A stretch of 64,000 bases of DNA, taken from Heteronotia binoei. Its lineage: Eukaryota. The stretch's first letter is position 1. Every line of letters begins with the position of its first letter. Below the pieces are notes generated by a model. The model ran no database searches, was not told where the DNA came from, and worked only from the letters and a program-made list of their open reading frames with translations. Below, piece by piece: positions 1 through 28,220 of this stretch. The stretch covers positions 15,252,001 through 15,316,000 of the forward strand of contig NC_083235.1 in NCBI RefSeq assembly GCF_032191835.1, in the 5' to 3' direction. A program made the position numbers and the translations under genes.

Positions 1-6
1 AGCGGA
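1..6 (-). CDS. CIRBP-like gene, probable start of exon 4 (truncated by window edge)
   Basis: The minus strand shows ctctctcatgtctctcttAG|TCC GCT: a strong pyrimidine tract in phase 0, where the family has S-x-DGRQI. Only 6 nt are visible. Confidence 0.55.
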
Positions 7-69
7 CTAAGAGAGACATGAGAGAGTTATGCATGGAGTCACGAGAGTTGACGAAGAGCAATTCTTCTC

Positions 70-457
70 TCTCAATAGGCTAGAACTCAACGGCACCAAA
101 TGAAGCTGATGGCTGGTTGATTCAAGATGGACAAAAGAAAATATTTCTTTACACACAAAGGGATTAAATGTGGAATTTGGTGCCAGAGAATATAGTGACA
201 GTCACAGGAATAAACAGCTTTAAAGGGGGATTAGATTGATGGAGGCCAGGTCTAACAGTGGCTATTAGCCATGGCAACTGAGAAGAACCTCCACATGCAG
301 AGGCACTGAGCTGTGCTCCCAGAGCCAGGAGGCAACATTAAGGAAAGGCCTCAGTCCTGGTTTTGGCCCTCTGGAGGAATTGGTTGGCCGCTGTGTGAAA
401 TTATGCTGGACTAGATGGACCACTGGTCCAATTCAGCAGGGCTCTGCTTATGTTCTA
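70..457 (+). mobile_element. CR1 LINE 3' fragment
   Basis: Degenerate RT C-terminal and 3' UTR sequence shared with the other CR1 copies in the window. Confidence 0.7.
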
Positions 458-526
458 CTTTATATAGGTAGCCTCTATTTACATTTGACTTCCACTAGCA
501 AACCTAAGCTTCTGGATGTTTTATAG

Positions 527-660
527 CAGGGGTGGCCAATGGTAGTTCTCCAGATGTTTTCTGCCTACAACTCCCATCAGCCACAGTCAGCATGGCCAAT
601 GGCTGGGGCTGATGGGAGTTGTAGGCAAAAAACATCTGGAGAACTACCGTTGGCCACCTG
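527..660. mobile_element. Short palindromic hAT-type MITE (TIR CAGGGGTGGCCAA); further copies at about 21570-21705, 45846-45975 and 54295-54405
   Basis: The element is nearly a full inverted repeat and recurs 4 times. Confidence 0.8.
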
Positions 661-1059
661 TTTATAGGCTACACTGGCCCCAAGCAATGGTAACATACAG
701 GGTGGTCAGCCTAAAGGAACATGCTTTTGTGAAAAGGAAAACAAAATGCCCAATTAGATAAAAGGGCACTCTCAAGTCTACCATGGGGATGCCTCTGCCA
801 TTTTGGGATGAAATTTTCGGTTTACAACGGCTGTCATGACTGGCACTGTGGTATCAACAGAGAGAGGGCTCTCTACCCAGGCTGGAGTTTTTTTGTTTTT
901 GAAAACAATGGAGGGGAAATGGCAGCAGCTCCACCCTCCACCCAGTACTGATCAGGGCTTGGGCCCCTGTGAACAAAGGGAATTTCACCATTAAAATGGC
1001 AGAGGCTTCGCTCCCCATGGTGGATTCAGGGAAGCCATCGCATCTAGCTGGGCCCTCAA

Positions 1060-1585
1060 GACTTGCATCGGAGGCAGTGCAGAAAAGGGCAACTAGAATG
1101 ATTAAAGGGTTGGAACACTTTCCCTATGAAGAGAGGTTAAAACGCTTGGGGCTCTTTAGCATGGAGAAATGTAGACTGAGGGGGTGACATGACAGAGGTT
1201 TACAAGATTACGCATAAGACAGAGAAGGTAGAGAAAGAAGTCCTTTTCTTCCTTTCTCACAATATGAGAACTTATGGGCATTCAATGAAATTGCTGAGCA
1301 GTTGGGATTAGAACGGATAAAAGGAAATATTTCTTTACCCAAAGGGTGATTATGTGGAATTCACTGCCACAGGATGGATTGGATAAGCTTTTGGAACAGA
1401 AATCCACCAGTGGCTATTAGCCACAGCCTATTGTCTGGGACAGTGATGATCTGTATTCTTGGTGCTTTGGGGGGGGGGGGGGAGCACAGTGGGACCTCCT
1501 GATGGCACCTGGGTTTTTTGGCCACTGTGTGACGAGTGTTGGACTGGATGGGCCATTGGCCTGATCCAACATGGCTTCTCTTATG
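1060..1585 (+). mobile_element. CR1 LINE 3' fragment
   Basis: Translates as [34 protein letters not shown], typical of the CR1 ORF2 C-terminus. Confidence 0.88.
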
Positions 1586-1870
1586 CTCTTAACAGTCCTG
1601 CTTGGCTTGCCTCTTCCAGATTCAGAAAAGCACAGGGAAGCTTAGATAAAAGTCCACTCTTCAGCAAACACAGAGAATAAAGGTGCAAGGAAATGCCCTT
1701 GGATTATAAATGATGTGATATCACCAATAAAGGGCATGGGGGCAGGTGCAACACAGGACCCCATTTTGGAAACTTGACCAGGTCTGTTATGGTACTGCTG
1801 TGAAGGGAAGGAACAAACAGAAGCAAGTTTGTGAACATCACTGCAGAAGGGAGAGGGAGCTCCCACTCAC

Positions 1871-1977
1871 CTCTCCATTCATGGCCCTCATGGCATCCTT
1901 AGCATCCTCAGGACGGCAATAGGTTATAAAACCAAAGCCCCTGGACCGCTGGGTTTCCCGGTCTTTCACTACAACCA
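1871..1977 (-). CDS. CIRBP-like gene exon 3 (RNP1)
   Basis: cccgcAG|TG GTT GTA GTG AAA GAC CGG...AAT GGA GAG|GTgagt; 107 nt, phase 1 to 0. Confidence 0.95.
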
Positions 1978-2639
1978 CTGCGGGTGGGAAAAATGAACAA
2001 GGTATCAGCCAGACATTTCAACTATAATCAGGAGCACATGAATATCTTGATACAGGCATCAGAAGTAGCACCGATTTTGGATCTCTAATCTTCAGAATCA
2101 TCCAAGCAACAAGATTCACTAATCAGTATTTAATACTGCAGAAGAGTAGCCTGCTGCACAAGTTAGCAAAACTGAGCATCACTACTTATGCACATTTATT
2201 CCCAATCACTTGCTTAGTAAATAGCTGCTTCTACTGGCTCACGTACTGGGGCAGTCTCCCACCATATGAATGGATGCAGTCACATTTGCTTTCTGTACAT
2301 TCTGAAACTCAATGATCACTTTCAAACTGAAGGAGTGCTTTGGTGAGAAAGCTAGCCGCTGCTTAATAATCATCAGCTCCAATCTACATAAGTCTGGCTT
2401 GACATGCTGCATGGATGGACACCGTTCTGGACATCAAGAGATGGGAATGCCAAGCAGGTGGCAAAGTGGAAGAAGAAAACCAGCTGCAAATATGGTTTGA
2501 GTTTTATCAGTTGAGCTTCTACAAAATCTGGCAAGCTATCTGAATTAACCCTAAAGATACTTCCAATTCCCTCAGAGCTGATATTCAAATTGTTACTCAC
2601 ATGTATGGAAGGCCCAAACTTACTGGAAGATATTGTTAG

Positions 2640-2850
2640 GGAGAGCCAATGTGGTTAGAGCAGTGTGTATAGCATGTCAGATTAGGTTCTGTGAGACCCA
2701 GGTTTGAATTTCTATTCCGCTATGGAAGTTTGCTAGGTGACTTTGGGCCAGTCACACACTCAGCTTAACCCACATAACAGGGTTGTTGTGAGGATAAAAT
2801 GCCAGAGAGGAGGCTGATGTCTGCTACTTTGCATCCCTGCTAGAATGAAA
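2640..2850 (+). mobile_element. Old CORE/MIR-like tRNA-SINE (similar remnants at about 12150-12290, 13050-13200, 33060-33150, 52100-52300)
   Basis: Degenerate A/B boxes and core motif gggttgttgtgaggataaaatg. Confidence 0.6.
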
Positions 2851-3389
2851 GGTGGGTACTGAGAAAGTTAATTATCCAAAATGATATTAGTCTTAGAAGT
2901 GGGAATTTCAACAGGCTTGAATTAGCAATGGGTAAGTGGAAAGAACTGCAGAGGAGAATCAGTAAGATACTAATGAGGCTCAAATAGATACAACAGAGCA
3001 ATAAGGATTTTAAAAAGAAGGCTTCCTAAAGCGTATCTGAGCTGTTATACAATCTATACTCATCTGCAGCAGTGGCCCCACTCGCAAGTGAACTTTGCTC
3101 CCAATAAGAACCCCACATGCGGATTTGCTACTGGAGCCCTCGCTACCATCTAGGTTGGCACACCTTATTCACACAACACCCGCCCTGTAACTATTAACGT
3201 GGTGCCTTTCTTTTGAGTGTCAATCACCAGGCAGAGATGATTTCTTCCCCACTCACACTTTGCTCACCTTTATATTTGCTGTGCTGAAAAGTGTGGCTTT
3301 CGCTGCCATTCTAGTTGGGAGTACGAATATCAATAATCTGGTCTTTACTGGGCCAGGAATTACTCTGAGGTCAGCATCATGTTTTAAAT

Positions 3390-3716
3390 CAGGGGTCTCC
3401 AAAGCTGTGTCTACTGACACCCTTCCTGACACCCACCGAGTTCTTTCACAAAGGGGGTAGGGACAGGGGAGGCTTTTGTCCAGCAAGGCTTCCGAATGAC
3501 CGCTGGAGATCTGATTGGCTCTGCAGGCTTTTTTTTTTTTTTTTTTAAACCTGCTCTGGCAGCAGCTACCACCACAGCACAAGGAGCTTTACTGTGTGAC
3601 TGAAGGTAAGCTGTGGTAGTCATTTGATGTCTGGCTACATCTCCTGTGGAAGCCATTTTGTGGCTGCCCCAACACTGTAAGAATTCTCACAGGCTCAAAA
3701 AAGTTGGGGACTCCTG
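3390..3716. mobile_element. hAT-type non-autonomous transposon
   Basis: TIR caggggtctccaa / ttggggactcctg with perfect 8-bp TSD ttttaaat. Confidence 0.85.
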
Positions 3717-4138
3717 TTTTAAATAAACGCAAACAATGGAAAACACTGCTGATGGGACTGACTCAAGACTCTTACAGTGAGGAAGTACATTAACGCTGCA
3801 AGTGAAAGCAAACTGGTAAAGACGAGGACATGAAAGTCAGCGCAGAACAAGTAAGCAACTCTCTTAAGCAGACTGTGCTGCTATTAAAGAATAGGTGCAT
3901 TTGATGAAAGGGGTAACATTTAAGTGAACTGTAAAAGAAACAGTATTTTGCATCTTTAGATTAATCTAAAACCAAGACTAGTAAAAGATGGGTATTTATT
4001 AACTAGTAATACAACCCTGGGAAATCAGGTGCCATACCATGCACTGTACATGGTTTATTTCTGTCTCACACTGTGTTTACGCTACTTCTGGACTAACACT
4101 TCAAGATGTAGGTCAGTCAAATGTTTCTTTTATTTTTA

Positions 4139-4332
4139 TGAACATATGAAGCTGGCTTATATTGAATCAGACCCTCGGTCCATCAAAGTCAGTATTGTCT
4201 ACTCAGACTAGCCAGCAGCTCTCCAGGGTCTCAAACTGAGGTTTTTCACACCTACTTGCCTGGACCCTTTTTAGTTGGAGATGCTGGGGATTGAACCTGG
4301 GACCTTCTGCTTACCAAGCAGATGCTCTACCA
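4139..4332 (-). mobile_element. tRNA-derived SINE, Squam2-like
   Basis: Reverse complement of the 31026-31237 copy, with A and B boxes. Confidence 0.82.
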
Positions 4333-4741
4333 CTGAGCCACCGTCCTTCCCCTAAAAACAAAACAAAAAAAGCCCCTTGCATGTTAAGAAAATCTGAACT
4401 TCCCCTTTATTATTGTTTTGTATGCACAGATGGTTTTTTAAAAAGTGGCACAGCTTACTACGATATAGAATTGATTAAGTATAGCAGCCCAACAAATTAA
4501 GGAATGTCCAGTTATCAACAGTGCCTCCTCTCTTGGGTAATAATGGAATCGACCTTTCACTCTGGCATTATTCATTTTTAACCATAATATTCCTGCAAGT
4601 GTGTAGTGCTTAGCTTAATTAAGCAATGCACACAATCCCAAAACTTTCATCCTTGCCATGTATCATGATACTGAAATGTGGCAAAGCCAGCCATTGTGAT
4701 ACCCTAGAGATACAGACGAGGCTGATGACACCTTTTCTCAC

Positions 4742-4844
4742 CTTCTGCAATGTCTCCATAGGGAGAGAACAACTGCTCCAGATTCTGCTCATTGGTGTCA
4801 AAACTGAGCCCTCCAATGAAGAGCTTTCCTTCATCCGATGCCAT
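4742..4844 (-). CDS. CIRBP-like gene exon 2, coding part (ATG, RNP2); whole exon is 4742-4855
   Basis: tttgtccacAG|attattccaaaATGGCATCGGATGAAGGA...GCA GAA G|GTgaga; 103 coding nt. Confidence 0.95.
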
Positions 4845-6569
4845 TTTGGAATAATCTGTGGACAAAGAATTGCTCGTTTGAATTTAGGCATCCTAAACAG
4901 CACCCTATTTTAATCTCCCAGCCACGCAGATCACCATTATTCCTCACCTCTCATTTGACCATCTGAAAGCACTGCTGGTGATCAGGTTTCCTTCACTCTA
5001 CCCCAACATATTGGACCAGTGTGTAAATCTGGTGTAAGGCCAAATTTATAATCCTTCTATTGTGTTGTCACTGATTAGAACCTACCCTGCCACACACATG
5101 ATCAGGGCCTAATCCCACCCCCTTGCAGCTAAATTTCAACAGGCACCTACCGCTTTTTAAATAAATCATTGTAGATGCTCATACCCACACAGGGATAACA
5201 AATGTACCTATAGTTTCACTTTCATGTTTGAGCCTTTTCTTTTCCCAGCAGCACCATTTATTTCAGGTTTATGCTGCTTACATTCTCTGACACCCCAAGG
5301 CAGAGACATACAGAATGTGAATGGTTGTTCATAGTTGTCTGTGTAGCTTACTATCAGGCTCCCCGCTTCTATGGACATATATTTGGAAGAAAATTTCACT
5401 ATAATCGGTGGCTTTCCTAGTTACATGTGCATGGGGAGCCTTAAAGCTTGGATGCAGCTCTAGTCGTTCCTAGCAGCAAACAAAGAGCCAAGAAACAAAA
5501 ATGCTTTATTAACACACATTTTATCTTTGCAGGTCCCTCCTGGTCACGACCCAATATCTTCTGAAGGAGTGGTACTTCTGGGTAAACATGTACACAATCA
5601 GGTTACAAAAGAACCTTTTTCAGAGAGGTGGATTGTTCCCCCGTTACTTCCGGGTAAAAAATAAATAAAAATCTCTTCTTTTGCCTTCTTCCTTTAGTAG
5701 TGCTCCAAACCTATTACTTTTAAGGTGATTAGATTACAATATTCCCTTTTAAAAAAAAAATTCCAGACAAGCATAAGCAAAATTGCAGACTTGCAATTTT
5801 TGTGGATTTGCAAGGCAATGCAAAGATGGCCTTCCTGGGACATGAAACCCTCAGCATCTCTAGCCAACCCTGCAGGCCATGCCTACTGCTCTGCAGCAGC
5901 TGCTTGTAAAGCAGGACGGACATTACTCCCCCAATAATCCTGGGTAGGACTGCTTCACCCTTCCACAAGCAGCCGGGAGACATTGTTTGATTAGGCACCT
6001 ATACTCATGACAAAACCTAGAGTTATGACCAGGCAGGGAGTGAATTCTGCCACAGCCCTTTGGAAAGGTCTGACCAAGGGAGCAGCCAGGGAAAGGGCAG
6101 GGATACATCTGGGAAACTGCCTTCTAGGGAACATGCCGCTAAGTTGGGACCAATACAATTTTAACTAGCTGTGATAATCACAATCGCCATGTTATGTAAC
6201 CCAAGCCACAAGAGTTTCTTGATTGGTTACATGGCTTGGCATCTCACCTTTGTGGCTCCTGGCAACAATATTTAAGTAACCCCGCAACTGTGAGATACAC
6301 AAAGTGTACAGGAATTAAAGCTGTAATCCTGTACACACACTTGTAACTCTTACTATGCTCGGTCAAACTTCCTTCTAAGTGAATGTGCCTTATGATCCGG
6401 CTAGACATGCAACGGCCTGCCTAATAAACTCCGCTGAAATATTTCCTCCGTGTAGTTGGCATTTGGTCCCTATCAACCCAGGCAAGTTGTTCAGGAGCAT
6501 AATACTAAAACAGTGGTGGCTGAACTACAGCTCAGGAACCACACAGGGCTCTCACACATGTTGTGGGGC

Positions 6570-7075
6570 TGATGAAGCCCCCACTGCCCCATCAGCCAGT
6601 TTGGAGAAGGCATTTGGCTCTTAACTCACTTCTCCAAGTCAAGCCAGCCAACAGCCTGGAGCAGGGGTGGCCAAATTGCGGCTCTTTCACACGCATCCTG
6701 TGGCTCTTGAAGACCCCACTGCCTCATCAGCTTGGCATTTCTCCAAACAAAGCCAGCGGCTTAGAAAATTCATTTAAATTTGCTTTCTTTCCACTTCTCC
6801 CTCCCTCCTCCTTCCCCCATCCATTTGCCTTCCTTCCATCTGTCTTGTGGCTCTCAAACATCTGAGGTTTATTCTATGTGACTCTTACGTTAAGCAAATG
6901 TGGCCATCCCTGGCCTGGAGAACGCATTTCAAGTTAAAGTTACTTTATTTCCATTTCCCTCTATTTGCCTTCCTTCCTCGTGGCTCTCAAACATCTGATA
7001 CCGATGTTTTCTGGCTCTAAAACGTCTGACATTTATTCTGTGGTTTTTACGTTAAGGAAGTTCGGCCACCGCCGT
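6570..7075. mobile_element. hAT MITE (6662-6912, TSD gcctggag) nested in an older copy of the same family
   Basis: Perfect 8-bp TSD at 6654-6661 and 6913-6920. The flanks resemble the interior of the insert. Confidence 0.78.
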
Positions 7076-7259
7076 ACCAAAATCTTGAATTTCTCAAAAA
7101 AAAAATGGGGATGAAATTACTGCAATCTACTGAAGGCATCAGCCATTAGGAGTTGGGCTTCCTTTAAACCCAGCACAGCGGAATTTTTTTAAGTGTTTTA
7201 TTATCCAAGAACGGGCGGGAAAAAGACAATTCTGCAGGCTGCTCCGGCGGACAGGGCTG

Positions 7260-8160
7260 CAATGATGGAGTGAGAGAAACGCTACCCGCTGGCAAGTCAG
7301 GAAGGCCTCCTTCCATCCACCCCCCCAGGATAAAATGGCCGCGAGCACGTGGCCTGAACAGAATGCGGGAAGACAAGCGCGGCGCGGTCTCACGTTCTTC
7401 AGGCGGGGGGTGGAACCCCCCTCCCTATTTACAGGCATGCGCGTTAGCGCTCCGCTGGCCTCCCGCGCCCAGCTCCCGGCCGTTGCGCAGGCGCGGCAGA
7501 GCGCGCGCTCAACCCTCAACCCCCTTCCCCCCACCCCCCGCAACACCTACGCTGCAAAGCATCCCGCTCCCCTGCCCGACTTTCCCGAAGCGTTAGCAAC
7601 CGCCCGCGCTCCCCTCTGGCACACGCGCACTGCGCCTCGCGAGCCGCCGCGGTGGGCTTTTTTTCCCCCCAGCGGCGCATGCGTGAGGCGGCCCGCCCGT
7701 TCTTTATGGGCAGCCGCCGCCATTTTGTGTAGCGTCTCTCCCTTCTCTCCTCCCCCACCTCGGGGGGAAAAAAAAGAAAAAGGCCCTTTTCTCCGCCGTC
7801 GTTCTGCCCCCTCAGGACCTTCCTCGTAACGGTCTCGGCGTCCCCCTGAGGAAAAGCGAACCGGGGGAGGGAAGCACTCACCGACAAAGGGGGACTCGGA
7901 GGAGGAGATGCGCGTAGACCCGTTAGCGGCTGAAGCAGGAGGCTATCGCGATGGCGGCAGGAGAAGAGAGGGGGGCGAGGAGAATGAAAGCGAGGCTGCG
8001 CTTTAAGCCCCGCCCCGCCACTCGGAGTCTGGCGCGCCATTGGCTGGAGGCAGAAAGGGCGGGGCTCAGCCGCAATAAAGGGCAGGCCCGCCCATTCAGG
8101 CTGGGGCATGCAGGGAAAAGGGGGGTGGCTGCGGTCGTCGTGCTTTCGCAGGCCTTGCTC
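7260..8160 (-). promoter_or_regulatory. CpG-island promoter of the CIRBP-like gene
   Basis: CpG-rich. TATA-like CTTAAAG (8001-8007), GC boxes (8008-8019), CCAAT (8039-8043), YY1-type AAAATGGC(G/C)GC motifs (7716-7726, 7332-7342) and NRF1-type GCGCATGCG (7675-7684). Confidence 0.8.
7882..7985 (-). other. CIRBP-like gene non-coding exon 1 (start approximate)
   Basis: Consensus donor TCG|GTGAGT at 7881/7880 inside the CpG island, a pyrimidine-rich start region, and no ATG in the exon. Confidence 0.75.
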
Positions 8161-8950
8161 GAAAATCCCCACCCAGGAATGCAAATCCTCCCGCACTTTT
8201 TGCAGCCATTCGTCATCCACAGATAAGGGTGCAACTGCTTCAAATGTTAAACATTGGGTTGCAACCAGTGTTCCCTCTAAGCTGAGTTAGCGGGAGCCAG
8301 CTCACACATTTTTGTCTTACCTCAGGGGGGAAATGGCCCCAGGGCACGCTAATTGATGCAGCAGCTCACAGCTTTCATGCCAGTAGCTCACAAAGTAGAA
8401 TTTTTGCTCACAAGACTCTGCAGCTTAGAGGGAACATTGGTTGCAACTGGTTTCATTGATTTTATGTGTGCCTTTTGTTGTACATCGCCTAGAGCTCAGC
8501 ATTGACCGGGATGAGGCGGTCATTGGGCATTTGCAGGCCTTCCTCGGAAATCCCCACCCAGGCATGCAAATCATCGGGCACTTTTTGCAGCCATTGGTCA
8601 TCCACAGATAAGGCTGCGACTTTTACATTTTAAACATTGGGTTGCAACCAGTGTTCCATCTAAGCTGAGTTAGCGTGAGCTATTTCACAGTTTTTTAGCT
8701 TCCAGCTCACACATTTTTGTCTTAGCTCAGAAAAAATGGTCCCAGAGCTTGTTGTGCTCACATCTTTAATGCCAGTAGCTCACAAAGTAGAATTTTTGCT
8801 CACAAGACTGCAGCTTAGAGGGAACAGCCGCCCTGAGCCACTTGTGGGAAGGGCGGGATATAAATCATAAATAAACTAAACTAAAAAAACTAAAAAACAT
8901 TGGTTGCAACTGTTTGTATTGATTTTATGTATATCCTTTGTTGTACAGGT
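8145..8950. repeat. About 400-bp tandem duplication, each copy carrying a CAGTGTTCCCTCTAAG-TIR MITE (8266-8439, 8651-8826)
   Basis: Colinear similarity between 8145-8490 and 8529-8950. MITE TSD gttgcaac in copy 1. Confidence 0.85.
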
Positions 8951-9245
8951 AAAGGTAGTCCCCTGTGCAAGCACCAGTCGTTTTTGATTCTGGGGTGACG
9001 TTGCTTTCACAACGTTTTCACGGCAGACTTTTTGCGGGGTGGTTTGCCATTGCCTTCCCCATTCATCTACACTCCCCACCCCCCAGCAAGCTGGGGACTC
9101 ATTTGACTGACCTTGGAAGGATGGAAGGCTGAGTCAACCTGGAGCCAGCTACCTGAACCAGCTTTCGCTGGGATTGAACTCACGTCCTGAGCAGAGGGCT
9201 CCGACTGCAATACTGCAGCTTTACCACTCTGTGCCACGGGGCTCT
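8947..9245 (-). mobile_element. Sauria SINE (other copies: 16715-16982 minus, 55300-55585 minus, 58400-58690 plus)
   Basis: Shared body ending ...ctgcacaggggactacctttacct and a tRNA-like head; four copies in the window. Confidence 0.85.
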
Positions 9246-9420
9246 TGGGTCAGCCATAGCTCTCGCAGAGTTGTCCTTGAAAGGGCAGCTGCTGTGAGAG
9301 TCCTCTCAGCCAACCCACCTCACAGGGTGTTGTGGGGGAGGAAGATAAAGGAGATTGTGATCCGCTCTGAGACTGAGATTCGGAGTGGAGGGAGGGATAT
9401 AAATCCAATATCATCTTCTT
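9246..9420 (+). mobile_element. 5'-truncated Squam3-like SINE
   Basis: Body and tail match the 12511 and 17527 copies. Confidence 0.8.
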
Positions 9421-9457
9421 CAGTCACTTGCTAGCTTTGGTTTCCCATTTGATAAAC

Positions 9458-15225: not shown

Positions 15226-15229
15226 AGAG

Positions 15230-15771: not shown

Positions 15772-15789
15772 CCCTAGAGCCACCACGAG

Positions 15790-19600: not shown

Positions 19601-22099
19601 CACTGTTTCTATTAATTTGGCATGGTGGTTAAGTGTGCAGACTCTTATCTGGGAGAACAAGGTTTGATTCCCCACTCCTCCACTTGCAGCTGCTGGAATG
19701 GCCTTGGGTCAGCCATAACTCTCGCAGTTGTCCTTGAAAGGGCAGCTTCTGGGAGAGCCCTCTCAGCCCCACCTACCTCACTGTGTCTGTTGTGGGGGAG
19801 TGGAGGACTGGATATAAACCCAATGTTGTTGTCTTATTACTGCATTGTAATATAGAATAATTATACAACTCACATCCCGGCTGCTAACAGGCCATGGACC
19901 AGTCCTGGTCTATGGGTTGGGGACCCCTGAACTAGATGACACAACTGCAGTAAGAACAATTATCAAAGGAAACCACTTACTTCATAGCATGGATTCAAGA
20001 GCTGGAGAAGCGGTTTCATTCCCATTCCAGTACTTCACCGCAGAATGGCATAACACCCTTCTCTCTTCTCACCTGCCAAAAACAGGTCAGTGTCACTAAC
20101 TCAAGCTCATTCAAAAACTCACTTCATTTCATAGATTATAGGTCTGACAGGATACTCCAGGGCTAGGTGATGCTGTTCACCTAGTCCTGAGGAGATTCCC
20201 CCAAGTTAATGTGGTCAATTTTTCTCCCTCATTTAGATCATCTAAAACCACATACCAGTGGAAAAATTGGCAAGTGGGAACAAAAGCCTCCCATACCCAA
20301 AGTATGCTGTGCTGAGAGAAACCTTCTCAACAGTCCAAGTTCTGCATAAGGCACTATTATAAAGTCTTGGACAAGACAGCTGGATGAATCCAAGTATTGT
20401 TTGGTTGGTTGCATTTCCCCATTTTTGGAAAGCAGATATCAATCACAGCAGCCAGCCAGGCCCTCCCCCAGGATAAAATTGCAGATTCAGACCAAGTTCT
20501 CCAGGGGGTCTGTAAAGACCCCAGGATTAGCCCAGTGAGTTTGTCAAAAAGCAGTAAGAACCAGTGGTTTGCTGTGGCCATAAGAATGGAGCTCTGTGGG
20601 AGAGAAGATGCAGACATGAGCAAAAGAGTTACCTCGAAATACAGGACTATTTCCACAAATGAACTAGCCAAGAGCAGCTTTCGTCTCACATGGATCGCAC
20701 TGAAGGAGGCACAACACACTTCGGGGGTCTCCAAGGAACACTGGCTTCCACACGCTAGCAGAGAATTCTCACAGTGTAAGAACAGGACAGAGCTAACTAC
20801 AGGTAGGCCCATCTAGGCACACCAACACCAGTTCCACCTCAACCCTGAAGCCTCAAGTCCCCAGATGTTGAGAGCTTCCTTCTCTAACAGCTCATCTGCC
20901 AAAGCTGAGTTTCTCCAAACCAAATAGGACATGCCATCCAACTTTAGGAAGCATTTGCATAAACCAAGAGGGCACCTTCCTTCCCGGGTTCACCCTAGCA
21001 ACAGCAATACAGCAGTATTACAATTGCAGCAAGGGACACCACCACGTGTTAACTGGACTCATTGTTTGAACCCTTAAAAGGGCCAGGTATTATGACAGAG
21101 CACAGGGTGTTTTACCACTGTACACATTTGTGCTGAGCACCCCACATTCTTATTTCCCTCTGTAGCACCAACTCCCAAACCAGAAAAATAGTGATGAACC
21201 TTCAAAAAAGCAAGCCAGTTAAAAGTTACTATTTGAAGGCCAAACCAGGACACTCAAGATCTTCAGCCACCAATGTCTTGAGGAATTCCACTGGGAATCA
21301 GTGCTTGCAAGACAACCACCACCACCACCTTGTTTTTAGCCACTACCCACTTAAGAGATAAAACCAATTCCCCAGGACTGCACTGTGGTGTAGATAAGCC
21401 TCCCAACATTCCAGGGAATCAAATGCTGGCAAATGCACAAGGGGGGGGGGGGAGGGGAGAGAATCTTTGCCTGTATGTATCCATGTGGGCCTTAAGAGTG
21501 GTTTGATGTAAGGTTACTCAGATACAATAGGATCACCAACATTACAGTGTATAGCATTAGGCCATACAGCAAGGGGAGCCAGTGGTAGCTCTCCAGATGT
21601 TTTTGCCTACAACTCCCATCAGCCCCAGCCATTGGCCATGCTGGCTGGGGTTAATGGGAGTTGTAGGGGAAAAACATCTGGAGAGCTACCGTTGCCCACC
21701 CCTGAAAGAACAGGCAGATTTCTCCATTTGTTCTGCCTTGTGTTGCACAGTATTACAGTTTTCATTCCTATCAGTTTCTTGGGAATTGGGAATTCTTGGG
21801 AATCTATCATTACCTGTTAACCAACTTTGGGCATTCTCTAGATGAGGCGAAACACATTTTTAGCTTACTTGCCCCTCAGCTATCTAAGTTGTGCGGTGCA
21901 ATGCGATGTCAAACGTCACGAGCAGAGAATTGTTTCAGATGGGATTTTAATGGGCTTCGTAAAGCCAAAAACTCAGTACAGGAACTTCCTTATCCACTTC
22001 AAAATACAATGTCAATGGAATTATGCACGCGTCTTCCAGTAAAAAAAGGACAATATAAACAAACATTTTCAAGAACCTCTCAAAGCGTCAGAGTCCTAG

Positions 22100-22555
22100 G
22101 TTTACTATACAGTAAAACAGACTTTATTGTGATCAATGCGAACCATTTAACCCTTTCAGTAACACCAAAGTGGCTTGCCTGTCACCCTCCCTTGTGATGC
22201 TAAGAGTTAAACTCCAAAAAGTGCATCGCACTTTTTCAGAAGTAATTTTTGCTCAGCTTCCGGTACTCTTAAGGGCCCCATTTAAGTCAAGTTAAAAGAA
22301 AACTTCAGGCTGAGAAAGACAAATAAAACCAGATTTCAAAAATGCTTTAAAACCACTCTTGAAAAAAAGAAATTCTTGAGCAAAGTCTAAACAGGCCATC
22401 TTGTAGAGGAAGCTTTCGGGCTGCATGTGACAAAAAGCTATATAGGGGAAGATACAAGTAGGTAACTAAAGATTCAGCGAAGCTCCAAAAATCTTTATAA
22501 ATACGGCCATTGGAAGGACGATCTTGATTCAGGAAGGATTTTTACTCGGTGTGAG
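22100..22555 (-). other. RBM3: RBM3 exon 7 (3' UTR)
   Basis: Acceptor cttcttgtcctcAG|ctcacacc. Contains GATCGTCCTTCCAATGGC, which I recall from human RBM3/CIRBP 3' UTRs. Ends at the AATAAA below. Confidence 0.85.
22123..22128 (-). terminator. RBM3: RBM3 polyadenylation signal AATAAA
   Basis: tttatt on the plus strand, followed on the minus strand by GT/T-rich sequence. Confidence 0.7.
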
Positions 22556-22949
22556 CTGAGGACAAGAAGCAGGTACAATCATAAAGGCACAAGCATATGG
22601 ACATGTTTGCAGCATTTTCACCATGCCTAGACTTTTTTAAAAGATTAGTGAGGCTAGGAATCTCAAGGCCCTCCCCCAAATTAGCACTCCGTAGCTGGGC
22701 TGTACAATTTTGAAGTTAACAGTTCTTAAGGTCCAACATGCATTTAAGTTAACGTATCGGTAATCTGAACTGATGCCTGCAATGTTTAGACTGAGTCAAC
22801 GGCAGGTGCTCAAAATCCTTCTTTTGAGCTTAGCTACCCAGTAGTGAGCTACTACTACAGCCACTACCTGTTGCAAGTTGGAACACTGCACGTTACAGGT
22901 GTTTTGGACAAGTAGGAAATTTGCAATCCCTTTCCCAGAGCTACCTACC

Positions 22950-23013
22950 TCAGTTGTCGTAGCTGTCTCTGTAAGAGCCTCCTGAAGAGTAGCGGTCATA
23001 GCCTCCCTGACTT
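22950..23013 (-). CDS. RBM3: RBM3 exon 6, coding part with stop (exon ends 22949)
   Basis: gttttcAG|A AGT CAG GGA GGC TAT...GAC AAC TGA G|GTaggt; 64 coding nt. Confidence 0.95.
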
Positions 23014-23091
23014 CTGAAAACAAAGGGTATGTGTTTTGCACTTGCTCAGTGAAAGTCAAAACTCTGAAACAGAGCTCATTGTCACAATTAC

Positions 23092-23167
23092 CTGCCGTAA
23101 TCCCGGGAACTACTATAACCTCCACTTCTGCTGTCGTAGCGACCACCATAGCTTCTGTCTCCACCAC
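23092..23167 (-). CDS. RBM3: RBM3 exon 5 (RGG/SY-rich)
   Basis: catcttgtAG|GT GGT GGA GAC AGA...TAC GGC AG|GTaatt; 76 nt. Confidence 0.95.
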
Positions 23168-23275
23168 CTACAAGATGAAGATGATTGACTGGTGAGCAGC
23201 CACCAATGGAATCAACCCTTCCCTCGATTAATCCAGAGCCAGTCAACAACGGCCACCACCCTTCTTCATGCTCAC

Positions 23276-23381
23276 CTCTGGAATAGCCACGGCCTCGGCC
23301 CCTTCCGCCAAAATAACCACCTCTGGATCCACGTGAAGATTTCCCTGCATGGTCAACTCTGATCTGGCGCCCATCTACAGA
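23276..23381 (-). CDS. RBM3: RBM3 exon 4
   Basis: gattAG|TCT GTA GAT GGG CGC CAG ATC...TCC AGA G|GTgagc; 106 nt. Confidence 0.96.
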
Positions 23382-24935
23382 CTAATCACACACACGAAAA
23401 CGTTTTAATGAGGGCTTTCTAGATATCATGGGAGATTGACTTGCCAAGCCTCCTGCCATCTTCAACTGCAATGAATGGACCTGGGCTGGGTTATTAACTC
23501 TAGATTACACCTATGCAACCCCTGAACTGATCAACTATACCTGCACCTGCAATTTGGCCACAAGTGGATTAAAAGTTGAAGGAATGCCAAATTTAGTACC
23601 TTGTTTTTGAGTAAGCATGCATATAATCATACTGGTAGCCTCACTTCCACCTTGCAGATCAGGCCAGATGGGAGATCTTAGGCAAAATGTTATGGATCAA
23701 GCAGAGATTTAAACCCAGATTCTAGATTTAAACATTCCAGTTGCTGCACATCAAAATTCATAGCAAGTCTAAAACTGCTTTGAGATCTAAACATATGCCA
23801 CAGTGCTTTTGGATAGCTTGAAAGGGCACAGCTTGGGCCACCTGAGATTTCTGAAGCATAAGGAAAATTTAGTGTCCTAAGGCGGCATTTTCCATCTCTG
23901 ATACAGGAACAGTGAGACATTTAATTCATCGTAGAATGGGGAAGAGAGAAGGGAGTAAGTAATCCATCTGTTAGGAGGGACTACAGAAAGAAGCTCTGAA
24001 CTAGTTTGGTATTTTTCTGATGCTTTTATTTTTCAAACAAAGCCTTTCTACCTGAACTAAAATAAGCTCAGCAGCCATGCATGCACACTCACCAACTCAT
24101 CCAATTTCGTCCATAGGTCGAACACTTAAGTACTGTCTTAGAAAGGCTGTTCAACATCAATTTGATCCACTTTCACGTTATAAATTATGGGCCAACCCAG
24201 ACATAAAAATTGGGGAAGGGGGAATGTTTTTATATGGAAGGCTTGGACCAATAGGGAGATTCATACTCAAATCATGTTTAGGATATACAAGACACACAGT
24301 AACTCTTTAGCAATGTTGAGTCAAGTGTCTAACTCACAGAACGTGACTTCTAAACGTATGCTTTCGGCATATCTGGTATTTTAGTTCTTCTGGAAGTCTT
24401 TGCTCATATCACTTTTGTGTTAGAAGATCCACTGATTTTTGAGAATGCTGCTGTACTTTATCAGCCTTGTTACATTACACAAATGCCCACCTCAGCATAT
24501 CAATGGACTGAGAAACTCAGAACTTTATCAATATTTGAATGCATGGCATATATACAGCAACTGCATATGGTTTTTAGATATTTGAGAACTTTAATAGAAG
24601 CTTCCACCGCTATTTAATAGAATCTGCCACCACTATTATATTTTCATCCCTACTTTATTTTTTTTAATTGTCACTGGATTTGGAGTTTTTTGCTTTTTTT
24701 TTGAAAGAAAAATAATTTTTAGGCCATTTAGGAAACACCTTGTCCAACAGGTACATCTGTCTCTTCTAAAACAGATTAGATTAGCCAGCTGTACTTTAAG
24801 CAGCTTCTCATGAATTACTGCTTGATCCAAGATTTTAAAAATAACAGCTAATCAGTCATAAAAGCACAAGTATACGGACAAGCTTGAAGCATTTTCACCA
24901 CTCCTAAACCAATACGAAATTTAAGCCATCCTTAC

Positions 24936-25042
24936 CTCCCCATTCATGGCTCTCATGGCATCTGACGCATGCTCAGGATTGGAAAAGGTGATAAAGCCAA
25001 ACCCTCTTGATCTCTGTGTTTCTTTGTCCTTGATCACTACAA
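24936..25042 (-). CDS. RBM3: RBM3 exon 3
   Basis: ggttctAG|TT GTA GTG ATC AAG...GGG GAG|GTaagg; 107 nt, contains RNP1 RGFGFITF. Confidence 0.97.
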
Positions 25043-25209
25043 CTAGAACCACAAAACAGAAAGTTACAAAAATCATTTGTAGAAGAGCTGGATTAGAGTT
25101 AAGTAGCACTTTAGAAACCAACAAAATTTCTCAAGGTATAAACTTTTGAGAGTCAATAGAATGAAAATGTCTTTGAATTAATCTCAACATCCACACAGAA
25201 TATTCTTAC

Positions 25210-25312
25210 CTTCAGAAATAGGACCAAAAGAGCTGAAATGCTGCTCCAGACCTTGTTCATCAGTGTCAAAGTTCAACCCCCCAACAAACAGCTTTCCTTC
25301 TTCAGAAGACAT
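25210..25312 (-). CDS. RBM3: RBM3 exon 2, coding part (whole exon 25210-25328)
   Basis: ttctgtAG|acacctcttcaccatcATGTCTTCTGAAGAAGGA...GAA G|GTaaga; 103 nt. Confidence 0.97.
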
Positions 25313-26449
25313 GATGGTGAAGAGGTGTCTACAGAACAACACACACAAAAATATGCGCTAGAAAAACAAATGTTGGTTGATCTTTTCAGCTAAGCATAAG
25401 AGCCACATGCTCCTTACTTATGTACAAGATGACTGAAAGTCTAGATATGAACACCATACAACACATTTCTTTGTGCATCTGTCCCCACCGCCCAAATCCT
25501 CTGTTCTCTACAGCTGGCCATATTACAATACTTCTGATTCAGTGGCAAGCAAAGCAACATGGTTTTACAAGATTACACTCAGTAGAAACTCAGGTCACAT
25601 CAAGCAAAAATAAGACTATTTTGTGTAACCCTACAAAAGCACATCTGGCGGAAGCAGCAGCTACGTGGCAGGAACAGCAGCCACATTGGCTTCCAAGCCT
25701 CATCAAGGCATTGGGACCCATTTTTTCTACAATATAATCCTACTTTTAACCCTGTCTGAAGAAATATGTCTACATTCTGTTTTGAGTCACTAAAAAAAAG
25801 TATGAGGAAAGGGTTGCTAATTTTTCTTTAAAAACCTAGAAAAGAGCTAGAAAAAGCCAGCACTACAGCAAATTGTGATTATAGCTTATATAGCAACTAG
25901 CACCTGACTAGTACCCAAGTTCAAACCTCCACTCACCATAAAAATTGCAAGGAGTCCACAGGTTAGCCCTTCTTCTCATCAACCTAAACCTAACCTACCT
26001 CAAACCTGGTCCAGAGCTCCTTGGCAGAATGGAAAAGTGAAGCACACTAAATAACCCAGTGTGCAAGCTGGCATCTATAAATGTAAACTGCACGCCTAAC
26101 TTTTACTTCTAGAGCTCTCATCTTGTTTTAAGCCACCTCAGGGGTCACCTGGAGCATCAGTCCAGCAGTGGGCTGCAAACCCCCAAGTGTGGCCTAGCCT
26201 GGTAATCACCTGGGATGCAACTGATCTCACAGTGACAGAGATCACCTCCCTTGGAGAAACTGGCTGCTTTGGAGATCTGCAGCATTGTACGCCTCCTGAA
26301 CTTTCCCTCCACAGGAATTTCCCAATGTGGTGTGAGCAACCCTAGACTCCACTGAGCTACATAGGGACTGAGGGCTGGGCCTTCAACCTCCACTTCCGCC
26401 TGTCACGTTAGGAAGATCAATTATGTCTCACTTCCCACAGCTACTAAAG

Positions 26450-27195
26450 GGGTGGCTAAACTGTGGCTCAGGAGTCCCATGTGACTCCTTCACACATCTT
26501 GCATGGCTCTCAAGGCCCTCACTGCTCCATTGGCTAGCTTGAAGAATACATTTTAAATTAAAGTTGCTTTCTTTAAACATCTCTCATCTATTTTTCTCCC
26601 TTCCTAGGGGGTTGAAAGATCTGTGTTGGAAAATACCTGGAAACCTTTGGGAGTGAAGCTGGGAGACAGTAGGGTTTGAGGGAAGGGAGGGGCCTCAACG
26701 TGGTATAATGCCAGAGTCCACCATTCAAAGCAGCCATTTTCTCCAGGGGAGCTGATCTCTGCCAGCTGGAGATCAGTTGTAAAAGTATGAGATCTCCAGG
26801 CCCCACCTGGAGGCTGGCAACCTTATGCCTTCCTTCCTAACTTGCAGCTCTCAAACGTCTGATGTTTATTCTATATCAAGGGTGTCCAAACTGTGGCTCG
26901 GGAGCCACGTGGCTCTTTCACACATATTGTATGGCTCTTAAAGTCCCCACTGCCCTGTTAGCTGGCAGCTTGGAGAATGCATTTAAAATTGCTTTCTTTC
27001 CACCTCTCCCTGCCTTCTCCCTCGCCATCTATTTTTCCTTCCTTCCTTCATCTGACAGTGTCCTGTGCCTCTCAGACAGATGTTATTCTTGTATTTCGGC
27101 CCTCAGACATCTGATGTTTCTGTCTTGTGGCTCTCAGGCATCTGACTTTTATTCTATGTGGCTCTTTTGTTAAGCAAGTTTGGCCACCTTTATAC
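26450..27195. mobile_element. Nested hAT MITE copies plus a GGGTTGCCA-family fragment in RBM3 intron 1
   Basis: Termini ggggtggctaaactgtggc and aggggtgtccaaactgtggc...gtttggccacc. Confidence 0.7.
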
Positions 27196-27199
27196 TGCG

Positions 27200-28220
27200 T
27201 GCCGGGGGGGGGGGGCATTCACGCCTCCGCGCCTTCTTATCACAATAAGGAAGTCCGATTTCCTGCACGGAGAGGGGAGAAAGCGCGTCTGTGGCCTCGC
27301 AGAAATCCGGCTTCGTCGACGAGCGAGGCCGCCTCCATTTCCCCGCCTCGAGCGCCATCTTGTTCACCCCGAGCGCTCAGCCGAGCAGCGTCTGTAGAGA
27401 ACCCAAGATGGCGGCCGAGGCACGGCCCAGGGGGCGACGCGTTTCCCACCAACCCGGAGGAAACACTCGACTTTTGGTTTTTCAGCCCCTCGACTTAGGA
27501 GCAGCCCGCCGAGCCCTGTGCAGCCCCCGCCCGAAAAAAAAAAAAACCCACACCATTGCCTTCCTCAGTGCTAGAAACAGCGTTCCCGCGCTAAGCCGCA
27601 TGCGCACAGCCGTTAGCGTCCTCGCGGGCCGCTCCCGTCGCGCATGCGCTCTCGAACCACCGCGCTGGGCCACCCACGCTCCCCCTTCCCTGTTCTTTTT
27701 CTTACGACGTCACTTTCACTAACGGTCGCTACCGCCGAGACCACAGCTAAAAAACACGTTTTCTTTACTCCTGAAAGGGATAACAAACATACCCAGAAGG
27801 GGCGGGGGGGTGTAAAAAAAGGCTTTACGATTATTTCCTTCCCAACTCACCAGATGACGCTTACCAAGCTGGAGCTGCTGGAAATGCGGGCCGAGGCGCC
27901 ACCCGCGCGACGCTTATATAGGGGACCGCCCACTAATGCTGGTCACGCGACCGTTACTCCGCCCTCTTTTTATGCTACGCATGCGTCCAGGGGTGGTTGG
28001 CGGCCAACGGTTGTAACTGAGACTGGGGAAAAGAACAAAAAAAAAAAAGTTACCATCCGGGCTTTGATTCAACTGACTTTCTCCAAAAAGACTCCCGAGT
28101 GCGTCATCCGGGGGTCTTGCTTGTCTTGCGCAACCGCCCTGTTCCCTAGAAGAGGTTGAACAAGAGAGCTTCACGCTGCATCTGCTTCCGGTTCCCTTTT
28201 AGAAACCCACGTGGGAAGCA
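27200..28220 (-). promoter_or_regulatory. RBM3: RBM3 CpG-island promoter with TATA box
   Basis: TATATAAG (27913-27920), YY1-type motifs (27352-27362, 27405-27415), NRF1 palindromes (27595-27606, 27640-27649) and E-box cccacgtggg (28207-28216). Confidence 0.82.
27851..27890 (-). other. RBM3: RBM3 short non-coding exon 1 (two candidate donors: exon ends 27865 or 27851)
   Basis: Inr-like GCATTTC about 35 nt downstream of TATATAAG. Donors are TTG|GTAAGC and CTG|GTGAGT. Confidence 0.75.

What the first reader, a model, noticed from the sequence alone, without database searches (positions are those of the whole stretch)
1..27920. Tandem pair of cold-shock genes: RBM3 followed by a chimeric-looking CIRBP-like paralogue
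Seen: two same-strand RRM genes about 14 kb apart with identical coding exon sizes (103, 107), each with its own CpG-island promoter. The downstream copy has a CIRBP-type N-terminus ([23 protein letters not shown]) but RBM3-type DAMRAMNGE, plus unusual residues ([15 protein letters not shown]). Known: human RBM3 (Xp11.23) and CIRBP (19p13.3) are unlinked, and CIRBP is implicated in reptile temperature-dependent sex determination. Inference: this may be a third family member kept in reptiles and lost in mammals, or a local duplicate that preserves the ancestral state, giving lizards an extra temperature-responsive RBP.
Basis: partly seen in the sequence, partly recalled or inferred. Interest (0 to 1): 0.75.

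Follow-up and report, generated by a model that had tools for sequence, protein, structure and literature searches.

The report
Third cold-shock RNA-binding gene beside RBM3
Next to the lizard's RBM3 gene sits an expressed, extremely conserved sister gene of RBM3 that still looks like CIRBP; lizards, snakes, tuatara, turtles and monotremes keep it, while birds, crocodilians and other mammals appear to have lost it, and no paper I could find describes it.

Summary
Two RRM genes lie head to tail on the minus strand, each behind its own CpG island. RBM3 is complete and encodes 151 aa. A CIRBP-like gene (here CL) shows only its 5'UTR exon and first two coding exons; the rest lies beyond base 1. 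Both genes have 103- and 107-nt first coding exons.

RNA reads show CL spliced exactly as modelled and continuing into an exon that begins SVDGRQIRVD.

CL is not the genome's CIRBP moved elsewhere. Its two exons are identical to a 148-aa protein that is invariant across nine squamate taxa, 98% identical in turtles and about 92% in platypus. In trees, CL groups with RBM3 (100/98 when rooted on ray sequences), not with CIRBP.

RBM3 followed by CL recurs in squamate and turtle assemblies. An alligator lizard assembly and Pogona each hold a separate canonical CIRBP elsewhere.

No bird, crocodilian or therian CL was found.

In published Pogona embryo data, CL runs at 260–2,500 TPM and is about 1.6-fold higher at 28 °C than at 36 °C. 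That comparison is confounded by genotype.

Databases already annotate the gene under inconsistent names. It needs one correction: monotremes keep the gene and archosaurs appear not to.

The parts
27001..28000 (-). RBM3 CpG-island promoter with a TATA-like box (tatataag, about 27917-27910) and a putative non-coding first exon (about 27890-27851)
   Evidence: CpG observed/expected 0.87-1.12 and GC 0.56-0.58; sequence read. The first-exon borders are not confirmed by reads.
22949..25312 (-). RBM3 coding region in five exons: 25312-25210, 25042-24936, 23381-23276, 23167-23092 and 23013-22949. The stop TGA at 22952-22950 lies one base before the splice donor.
   Evidence: Canonical AG/GT sites and an intact 151-aa ORF. 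98% identical to Liasis RBM3 and inside the RBM3 clade, support 100/100.
21900..22555 (-). RBM3 3'UTR exon (acceptor at 22555; AATAAA at 22128-22123; the 3' end is approximate). It holds two blocks conserved across all three paralogues.
   Evidence: Sequence. 82-87% identical to the RBM3 3'UTR of other squamates; 76-89% identical to CL 3'UTRs, including platypus; 82-88% identical to the Elgaria CIRBP locus L019.
20054..21315 (-). Conserved non-coding block between RBM3 and CL. Its function is unknown; it may be a long RBM3 3'UTR isoform or an enhancer.
   Evidence: 73-79% identical over 0.9-1.3 kb to the same position in squamate loci L003-L008 and L010. No Pfam hit for its ORF.
7001..8100 (-). 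CL CpG-island promoter with a CCAAT box and GC boxes at about 8045-8010
   Evidence: CpG observed/expected 0.93-0.96; sequence. 70-74% identical to the region upstream of CL in other squamates.
7883..7980 (-). CL non-coding first exon. The 3' border at 7883 is exact; the 5' border is approximate, at or beyond 7955.
   Evidence: RNA loose ends at 4856 carry 30 letters that match 7912-7883 exactly and uniquely; an RNA contig extends 73 nt into this exon; a GT donor follows.
4742..4856 (-). CL exon 2, the first coding exon (ATG at 4844, 103 coding nt, 34 codons plus 1 base)
   Evidence: Exon borders come from the RNA joint and loose ends. 100% identical to P0260 residues 1-34.
1871..1977 (-). CL exon 3, the second coding exon (107 nt; holds RNP1, RGFGFITY)
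   Evidence: Joint 1977/4742 with a GT..AG intron is seen in four RNA runs. Loose ends at 1871 read on into SVDGRQIRVD, the next exon, which lies outside the window.
1..1870 (-). First 1.87 kb of CL intron 3 (it follows the second coding exon). The remaining coding exons lie beyond the window start.
   Evidence: No DGRxIxV-type exon in any frame here. In orthologous loci this intron is 1-5 kb long.

Best explanation
The window holds the Xp11.23-type RBM3 locus of a squamate. [quoted passage not shown]

Shown:
- CL is transcribed from its own CpG-island promoter and is correctly spliced.
- Over the 70 codons visible here, it is identical to an orthologue of about 148 aa. That orthologue has one N-terminal RRM (RNP2 KLFIGGL, RNP1 RGFGFITY) and an RGG/Gly-Tyr-rich tail ending in YDN.
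- CL's stop codon lies at the very end of the penultimate exon; RBM3's lies one base before that exon's end.

Inferred history:
1. A cirbp-type gene was copied to this locus in the tetrapod or amniote stem.
2. That copy duplicated in tandem before the last common ancestor of living amniotes.
3. One copy, RBM3, then diverged quickly. The other, CL, has barely changed since: 98% identity between squamates and turtles, about 92% between squamates and platypus. CL therefore still looks CIRBP-like at its N-terminus while sharing derived features with RBM3.
4. CL was kept in lepidosaurs, turtles and monotremes, and apparently lost in therian mammals and in archosaurs.

Inferred function: like its two paralogues, CL is an abundant mRNA-binding chaperone whose level depends on temperature. 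It probably acts through 3'UTR binding. It is probably controlled after transcription, because its conserved 3'UTR blocks are shared with RBM3 and CIRBP and because database models of CL that read on into the intron after the second coding exon exist.
For: Expression and splicing: the 1977/4742 joint appears in two contig sets and in 107 and 141 raw reads. Loose ends reach the 5'UTR exon at 7883 and a downstream SVDGRQIRVD exon.

Orthogroup:
- Exon 1 is 100% identical in ORFs from at least five other genomes.
- A search with residues 1-70 finds a group at 92-100% identity (turtles, squamates, echidna). Every canonical CIRBP scores only about 80%.
- Cluster members come from more than 12 squamates, more than 8 turtles, platypus and echidna.

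Linkage: RBM3 exons or its 3'UTR lie within 10 kb upstream of CL on the same strand in squamate loci L003-L008 and L010 and in turtle loci L012-L016. The Pogona gene order is ARAF ... RBM3-like, CIRBP-like, ABT1 ... WDR13, GPKOW, TFE3 (PMC8049264 supplement).

Separate canonical CIRBP:
- Assembly GCA_023053635.2 has CIRBP on a 13.9-Mb chromosome (L019) and CL on a 176-Mb chromosome (L010).
- Pogona gene8711_CIRBP is numbered next to gene8710_ADAMTSL5. My recollection is that human ADAMTSL5 lies at 19p13.3, near CIRBP.

Phylogeny:
- The {CL+RBM3} split has support 100/99, 98/91 on the RRM alone, and 100/98 as a rooted clade with skate and ray sequences as outgroup.
- RBM3 sits on a long stem (0.13-0.18) while CL branches are near zero.
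- CL monophyly is not rejected (AU p 0.40).

Gene architecture: in CL loci the stop codon abuts the GT donor (TAG|GT). The 3'UTR exon is homologous to that of RBM3.

Abundance: 260-2,500 TPM in Pogona embryonic gonads. Levels are 1.65-fold higher at 28 °C than at 36 °C at stage 12 (Mann-Whitney p 0.0004).
Against: - Only 70 codons are visible here. The integrity of the rest of the gene in this genome is inferred from an RNA contig that runs 237 nt further and from orthologues.
- The RRM of CL is closer in raw identity to CIRBP (83%) than to RBM3 (77%).
- The AU test does not formally reject CL grouping with amniote CIRBP (p 0.0575).
- The outgroup branches are long.
- CL is not resolved as a clade in the full-length trees, because its branches are almost zero.
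- The losses in archosaurs and therians rest on limited evidence: no hits among annotated proteins, and 10-kb flanks in one alligator and one kiwi.
- I saw no RBM3 within 10 kb upstream of CL in platypus; the echidna flank was not scanned, and only the called-gene table shows nothing there.
- The Pogona temperature contrast is confounded with genotype (ZW at 28 °C, ZZ at 36 °C) and is below two-fold.
- This genome's own CIRBP locus was not seen.
Confidence: 0.8

Rival explanations
1. CL is sister to CIRBP, not to RBM3. On this view an old tandem pair (proto-RBM3 plus proto-CIRBP/CL) existed first, and canonical CIRBP later arose from the CL copy by dispersed or whole-genome duplication.
For: The CL RRM is 83% identical to CIRBP against 77% to RBM3. 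The unrooted trees have only three big groups, so by themselves they cannot say which two are sisters. CL plus amniote CIRBP as one clade is not formally rejected (AU p 0.0575). Skates and rays also carry tandem pairs of family members.
Against: With batoid outgroups, {CL+RBM3} is a rooted clade at 100/98, nested among tetrapod sequences, with ray-finned-fish cirbp outside it. Holding CL with CIRBP costs 23.8 log-likelihood units. CL and RBM3 share the YDN end with the stop at the end of the penultimate exon, the AMRAMNGE motif and the shorter tail.
Confidence: 0.12
2. CL is a recent, squamate-specific product: a local duplicate of RBM3 whose 5' half was overwritten by gene conversion or exon shuffling from CIRBP. 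That is the literal 'chimera' reading.
For: The N-terminal motifs are CIRBP-like and DAMRAMNGE is RBM3-like, in two adjacent exons.
Against: Turtles, tuatara, platypus and echidna show the same mosaic, with the same diagnostic residues (SPYG/APYG, ITY-[CR]R-PEDAK). So it is at least as old as living amniotes. The 'CIRBP-like' residues also occur in amphibian and fish cirbp, so they are ancestral states that RBM3 lost.
Confidence: 0.03
3. CL is simply this lineage's bona fide CIRBP, relocated next to RBM3, with no other CIRBP in the genome.
For: Some database records name the orthologue 'cold-inducible RNA-binding protein' (Anolis, Pogona, Chelonia). This genome's own CIRBP locus was not seen.
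Against: Canonical CIRBP proteins exist in Varanus, Anolis, Elgaria, Podarcis and Crotalus alongside CL. They lie on a different chromosome in the same assembly. In Pogona the canonical gene sits beside ADAMTSL5. CL falls outside the CIRBP clade, support 96/91.
Confidence: 0.03
4. CL is transcribed but is a decaying or non-functional copy.
For: The C-terminal exons are unseen in this genome. A few database models are frame-shifted (Crotalus P0066 and P0267).
Against: The protein is invariant in nine squamate taxa and 98% identical to the turtle protein. Splicing is correct in this species. It is among the most abundant transcripts in Pogona embryonic gonads.
Confidence: 0.02

Closest known systems
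RBM3 (RNA-binding motif protein 3; human Xp11.23; RRM structure 7EB1)
   Same: - It is the immediate upstream neighbour on the same strand.
- Exon sizes and phases match (103, then 107 nt).
- Both end in YRD-x-YDN with the stop at or one base before the end of the penultimate exon, followed by a homologous 3'UTR exon.
- Both carry AMRAMNGE.
- Both fall in one rooted clade, support 100/98.
- PDB match to 7EB1, E 6.6e-36.
   Different: - CL lies outside the RBM3 clade (100/100).
- It is only about 78% identical to the RBM3 of the same window.
- It keeps [20 protein letters not shown] and KDRETQ, where squamate RBM3 has [20 protein letters not shown] and KDKETQ.
- It evolves far more slowly: about 92% identity between squamate and platypus CL, against 86-87% between reptile and eutherian RBM3.
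[quoted passage not shown]
   Same: It is the best PDB match (E 3e-43). The RRM is 83% identical, with the same N-terminal motifs. The overall architecture is the same: an RRM plus an RGG tail. Both have the conserved 3'UTR blocks.
   Different: - CL is on a different chromosome with different synteny.
- It lacks the longer CIRBP-type RG/RGG stretch (gaps in the pairwise alignment) and the SYDSY-ATHNE end.
- It is excluded from the CIRBP clade.
- In Pogona embryos CIRBP rises at 36 °C while CL is lower at 36 °C.
[quoted passage not shown]
   Same: This is the same gene. The window's 70 codons are 100% identical to P0260, and the gene has the same position downstream of RBM3.
   Different: Nothing biological differs. 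These entries are automatic annotations with conflicting names (CIRBP, CIRBP-like, RBM3, RBM3-like). Some are chimeric models that fuse RBM3 exons to CL exons (tuatara P0279, Terrapene P0280). I found no paper describing the gene.

Membership tests
CIRBP/RBM3 family of glycine-rich cold-shock RNA-binding proteins | A single N-terminal RRM with RNP2 and RNP1 motifs | tested here: met
   KLFIGGL and RGFGFITY are in the window exons. Pfam RRM_1 is recorded for the orthologues. The top PDB matches are the CIRBP and RBM3 RRMs.
CIRBP/RBM3 family of glycine-rich cold-shock RNA-binding proteins | A C-terminal RGG/Gly-Tyr-rich disordered tail | tested here: inconclusive
   The tail is present in every full-length orthologue (P0260, P0261, P0276). 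In this genome those exons lie outside the window. Only the first 10 residues after exon 2 were seen in RNA.
CIRBP/RBM3 family of glycine-rich cold-shock RNA-binding proteins | Conserved gene structure: 103-nt and 107-nt first coding exons, with the RRM split in phase 1 | tested here: met
CIRBP/RBM3 family of glycine-rich cold-shock RNA-binding proteins | Expression rises at lower temperature | tested here: inconclusive
   Pogona S11 data show 1.4-1.8-fold more CL at 28 °C than at 36 °C (stage 12 p 0.0004). However, temperature is confounded with genotype, and the species is not that of the window.
Canonical CIRBP orthologue | Falls inside the CIRBP clade | tested here: not met
   The amniote CIRBP clade (96/91) excludes CL, and CL groups with RBM3. 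The AU test of CL plus CIRBP gives p 0.0575.
Canonical CIRBP orthologue | 19p13.3-type neighbourhood | tested here: not met
   CL lies beside RBM3 here. In Pogona it lies between ARAF and WDR13, whereas Pogona CIRBP is numbered next to ADAMTSL5.
Canonical CIRBP orthologue | Long RGG segment and a C-terminus of the SYDSY-ATHNE type | tested here: not met
   CL orthologues are 148-149 aa and end in YDN. CIRBPs are 171-185 aa.
RBM3 orthologue | Falls inside the RBM3 clade | tested here: not met
   The RBM3 clade (100/100) contains the window's other gene and excludes CL.
CL orthogroup (RBM3-adjacent 'CIRBP-like' gene of lepidosaurs, turtles and monotremes) | Diagnostic residues SPYG/APYG and ITY-[CR]R-PEDAK together with AMRAMNGE | tested here: met
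CL orthogroup (RBM3-adjacent 'CIRBP-like' gene of lepidosaurs, turtles and monotremes) | Position immediately downstream of RBM3 on the same strand | tested here: met
   Seen in the window, in seven squamate loci and in five turtle loci. Not confirmed in monotremes within 10 kb: tblastn of the platypus flank found nothing, and the echidna flank was not scanned; only its called-gene table shows nothing upstream.

The most novel reading that the evidence does not exclude
Ancestral amniotes had three cold-shock RNA-binding proteins, not two. The third, CL, is the least changed and, at least in the one lizard tissue with published data, about as abundant as RBM3.

It is kept in the ectothermic lepidosaurs and turtles and in the low-body-temperature monotremes. 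It appears to have been lost independently in therians and in archosaurs. Therians and birds are endotherms. Crocodilians are ectotherms, and whether their ancestors were endothermic is my recollection of a debated idea, not something tested here.

On this reading CL would be the temperature-tracking RNA chaperone of animals whose tissues really do change temperature. It responds in the opposite direction to CIRBP in reptile gonads, and so could be an unstudied player in temperature-dependent development.
Probability: 0.2. Interest if true: 0.75.

Novelty: new member of a known kind. Interest (0 to 1): 0.55.

Why it matters
Cold-shock RNA-binding proteins are studied for neuroprotection, hibernation and reptile temperature-dependent sex determination, always as a pair, CIRBP and RBM3.

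These data show a third gene that is strongly conserved and highly expressed in lizards, snakes, tuatara, turtles and monotremes.

Its database names conflict: CIRBP, CIRBP-like, RBM3 and RBM3-like. Some gene models fuse it with RBM3. Read counts, orthology tables and candidate-gene work in reptiles can therefore mix the three genes up. I checked one prominent case: the Pogona 'CIRBP' signal does belong to the canonical gene.

The finding also changes the picture of RBM3's origin. RBM3 becomes the fast-evolving half of a tandem pair. CL then offers a natural contrast for asking what RBM3 gained and what therians gave up.

Tried and rejected
1. Pogona 'CIRBP'. I suspected that the 'CIRBP' reported as up-regulated in sex-reversing Pogona embryos (PMC8049264) was really CL, because one record names the Pogona CL protein 'cold-inducible RNA-binding protein'. 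Rejected. Their gene8711_CIRBP is numbered next to gene8710_ADAMTSL5, while CL is a separate entry, LOC110081132, beside the RBM3-like gene.

2. Species identity. I looked for the window's own species among ten squamate loci. None is closer than about 70-87% at DNA level, so the species remains unidentified.

3. Lookups that returned nothing. Exact-sequence lookups for Tiliqua RBM3 and Anolis CIRBP found no record.

4. Missing exon 3. I looked for exon 3 of CL inside 1-1870. It is absent.

5. Regulated exon in the intron after the second coding exon. I looked for a conserved 'poison exon'-like block in the visible part of that intron. Nothing is conserved there, but the rest of the intron is outside the window.

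6. Poor tail alignment. A first alignment that included the glycine-rich RBM3 exons aligned badly. I replaced it with the RRM exons only.

7. Literature. Five searches for a described third paralogue found none.

8. Joined models. Searches used exon references or an alignment of exon references against a database protein. Exons were joined only inside local scripts, for translation and trees. That is also why I could not look up the window's RBM3 protein by exact sequence.

Full report
**What is in the window**

Both genes are on the minus strand.

RBM3 is complete:
- It has a TATA-containing CpG-island promoter at about 27.0-28.0 kb.
- Its five coding exons are 25312-25210, 25042-24936, 23381-23276, 23167-23092 and 23013-22949.
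- All splice sites are AG/GT, and the ORF is 151 aa, ending in YDN.
- The TGA stop lies one base before a splice donor.
- A 3'UTR exon starts at 22555.

The second gene, called CL here, has these parts:
- A CCAAT/GC-box CpG-island promoter at about 8.0 kb.
- A non-coding first exon ending at 7883.
- A first coding exon, 4856-4742, with the ATG at 4844 and 103 coding nt.
- A second coding exon, 1977-1871, of 107 nt.

CL then runs off the start of the window. No exon of the SVDGRQIRVD type exists in 1-1870. The two CpG islands are the only ones in the 64 kb.

**Is CL expressed?**

I laid four RNA runs on 1801-7800.
- The intron 1978-4741 is spliced out (GT..AG on the minus strand) in assembled contigs of two runs and in 107 and 141 raw reads of two others.
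- Reads ending at 4856 continue with 30 letters that match 7912-7883 uniquely. This defines the 5'UTR exon.
- Reads ending at 1871 continue with letters that translate to SVDGRQIRVD, the expected next exon.
- One 532-nt contig carries 237 nt beyond exon 2.

The 'unexpressed' refutation therefore fails. Integrity of the remaining exons in this genome is still an inference.

**What is CL?**

A search of the representative protein library with exon 1 alone (by reference) found ORFs from at least five other genomes. Their exon 1 is 100% identical, but they read on into different introns. It also found a tortoise protein, P0031.

A word search scored on residues 1-70 of P0031 separated two sets:
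- A tight set at 92-100% identity: turtles, Gekko, Podarcis, Vipera, Crotalus and echidna.
- Every canonical CIRBP, including those of Varanus, Anolis and Crotalus, at about 80%.

The cluster members show one protein of 148 aa (P0260) that is identical in nine squamate taxa on 26 contigs. Near-identical proteins occur in geckos, skinks, lacertids, agamids, snakes, at least eight turtle genera, platypus and echidna.

The source names disagree: CIRBP, CIRBP-like, RBM3 and RBM3-like. Tuatara and Terrapene models (P0279, P0280) are chimeras with an RBM3 RRM and a CL tail, which also implies that the pair exists there.

Conservation is very high:
- CL: squamate versus turtle 98%; squamate versus platypus about 92%.
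- RBM3: reptile versus eutherian 86-87%.
- CIRBP: 91-93%.

**Linkage**

- In squamate loci L003-L008 and L010 and turtle loci L012-L016, the last RBM3 exons or the RBM3 3'UTR lie on the same strand within 10 kb upstream of CL's ATG.
- In Chrysemys (L014) the whole RBM3 gene sits 7.8 kb upstream of CL.
- In the Pogona annotation used by PMC8049264 the numbered gene order is NDUFB11, UBA1, UXT, ARAF ... LOC110081131 (RBM3-like), LOC110081132 (CIRBP-like), ABT1, GRM6 ... WDR13, GPKOW, TFE3, GRIPAP1. From my own knowledge of the human map, most of these genes are at human Xp11.
- In platypus and echidna a C-type lysozyme gene follows CL, and one also lies downstream of CL in Liasis (opposite strand).
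- tblastn found no RBM3 within 10 kb upstream of CL in platypus. The echidna flank was not scanned; its called-gene table lists nothing upstream.

**Is there a separate CIRBP?**

I could not search this genome itself. Other squamates give the answer:
- Assembly GCA_023053635.2 has canonical CIRBP on a 13.9-Mb chromosome (L019) and CL on a 176-Mb chromosome (L010).
- Crotalus adamanteus has both genes on different contigs.
- Pogona gene8711_CIRBP is numbered next to gene8710_ADAMTSL5, a 19p13.3-type neighbour by my recollection of the human map.

**Phylogeny**

I built an ML tree of 55 proteins. The window's RBM3 and the 70 CL codons were joined only inside the script. The chimeric models P0279/P0280, the frame-shifted Crotalus models and isoforms that read on into introns were left out.

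- This tree gives a 100/99 split between {CL+RBM3} and {amniote CIRBP + amphibian + ray-finned-fish cirbp}. RBM3 is a 100/100 clade on a long stem, and CL branches are near zero.
- The RRM alone gives the same split at 98/91.
- An unrooted tree of three groups cannot name sisters. I therefore added two tandem pairs from a skate and an electric ray (P0014, P0025) and a bonefish pair.
- Rooted on the batoids, {CL+RBM3} is a clade at 100/98, nested among tetrapod sequences.
- AU tests: CL monophyly is not rejected (p 0.40). Forcing CL with amniote CIRBP costs 23.8 lnL, p 0.0575, which is borderline.

Independent characters agree with the tree. In CL the stop codon is flush with the end of the penultimate exon, and in RBM3 it lies one base before it. 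Both end in YDN and share AMRAMNGE.

The CIRBP-like N-terminal residues of CL also occur in amphibian and fish cirbp. They are therefore ancestral states, not evidence of a chimera.

**Losses**

- No bird, crocodilian or therian protein joined the CL set in either search, although RBM3 of alligator, kiwi, crane and many mammals did.
- The 10 kb downstream of RBM3 in Alligator sinensis (L017) and Apteryx (L018) contain no CL-like exon and no assembly gaps.
- This suggests loss in archosaurs and therians but does not prove it.

**Function**

CL has the family's architecture, and its best structural relatives are the RRMs of human CIRBP and RBM3.

Two 3'UTR blocks of the window's RBM3 are 76-89% identical to the CL 3'UTR in squamates, turtles and platypus. 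They are 82-88% identical to the Elgaria CIRBP locus. All three genes therefore share ancient UTR elements.

In Pogona embryonic gonads (PMC8049264 S11):
- CL is at 260-2,500 TPM, as high as or higher than the RBM3-like gene.
- It is 1.79-, 1.65- and 1.39-fold higher at 28 °C (ZW) than at 36 °C (ZZ) at the three stages. Stage 12 gives p 0.0004.
- The RBM3-like gene does not differ significantly at any stage (ratios 1.45, 1.05 and 0.98).
- The paper reports canonical CIRBP as up at 36 °C.
- Genotype and temperature are confounded, so this is a lead, not a demonstration.

**Known or new?**

The gene is annotated automatically in many genomes. Five full-text searches found no paper that recognises it as a distinct third family member or discusses its linkage to RBM3. 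Turtle and tuatara genome papers mention only 'CIRBP'.

I file it as a new member of a known kind. It is real and well supported, of moderate to good interest, and it comes with a practical warning about gene naming.

- The N run at 45706-45845 was left untouched.
- The reads tool was given 6,000 letters.

Noticed in passing
window 36794-37201 and 39984-40418, minus strand: A two-exon paired-class homeobox gene lies upstream of RBM3 (Pfam Homeodomain, E 2e-13; the homeodomain is split after ...NEARIQ). From memory its homeodomain resembles PROP1, but I did not test that.
   Followed up: partly
window 56976-57197, plus strand: An exon of a C-type lysozyme/alpha-lactalbumin family gene (Pfam Lys, E 1e-15). 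Lysozyme-family genes also lie just downstream of CL in Liasis (L004), platypus (L011) and echidna (L020).
   Followed up: partly
window 20054-21315: A block of about 1.2 kb between RBM3 and CL is conserved at 73-79% identity across squamates, at the same relative position. It has no protein-family hit. It may be a long RBM3 3'UTR isoform, a non-coding RNA or an enhancer.
   Followed up: no
window 22590-22390 and 22076-21911 (RBM3 3'UTR); matched in L001-L016 and L019: Two 3'UTR blocks are shared at 76-89% identity by RBM3, CL (including platypus) and canonical CIRBP (Elgaria). These non-coding elements are therefore older than the paralogue splits.
   Followed up: partly
window 7406-7312 and 7759-7675 (CL first intron): Two short blocks are 78-91% identical in all squamate loci. 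The first holds a CACGTG E-box next to GCCATTTT. It may be an alternative promoter or an intronic enhancer.
   Followed up: no
window 4137-4357 (CL intron between the ATG exon and the next coding exon): A tRNA-derived SINE copy attracts very high RNA depth from other copies in the genome and produces many false joints. The three ARAGORN 'tRNA' calls at 31029, 38909 and 54585 are probably SINE heads of the same kind.
   Followed up: no
P0279 (tuatara) and P0280 (Terrapene): Database gene models fuse the RBM3 RRM exons to the CL tail exons. These are either read-through transcripts or annotation artefacts of the tandem pair. UniProt names several turtle CL proteins 'RNA-binding protein 3'.
   Followed up: partly
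P0014 (Rhinoraja) and P0025 (Narcine): Skates and rays carry tandem pairs of CIRBP-family genes, fused in single gene models. In the tree they form their own clade, so tandem duplication of this family has happened more than once.
   Followed up: partly
window 41197-42344 plus strand; 63402-63836 minus strand: Long ORFs with no Pfam hit, probably remnants of transposable elements.
   Followed up: no
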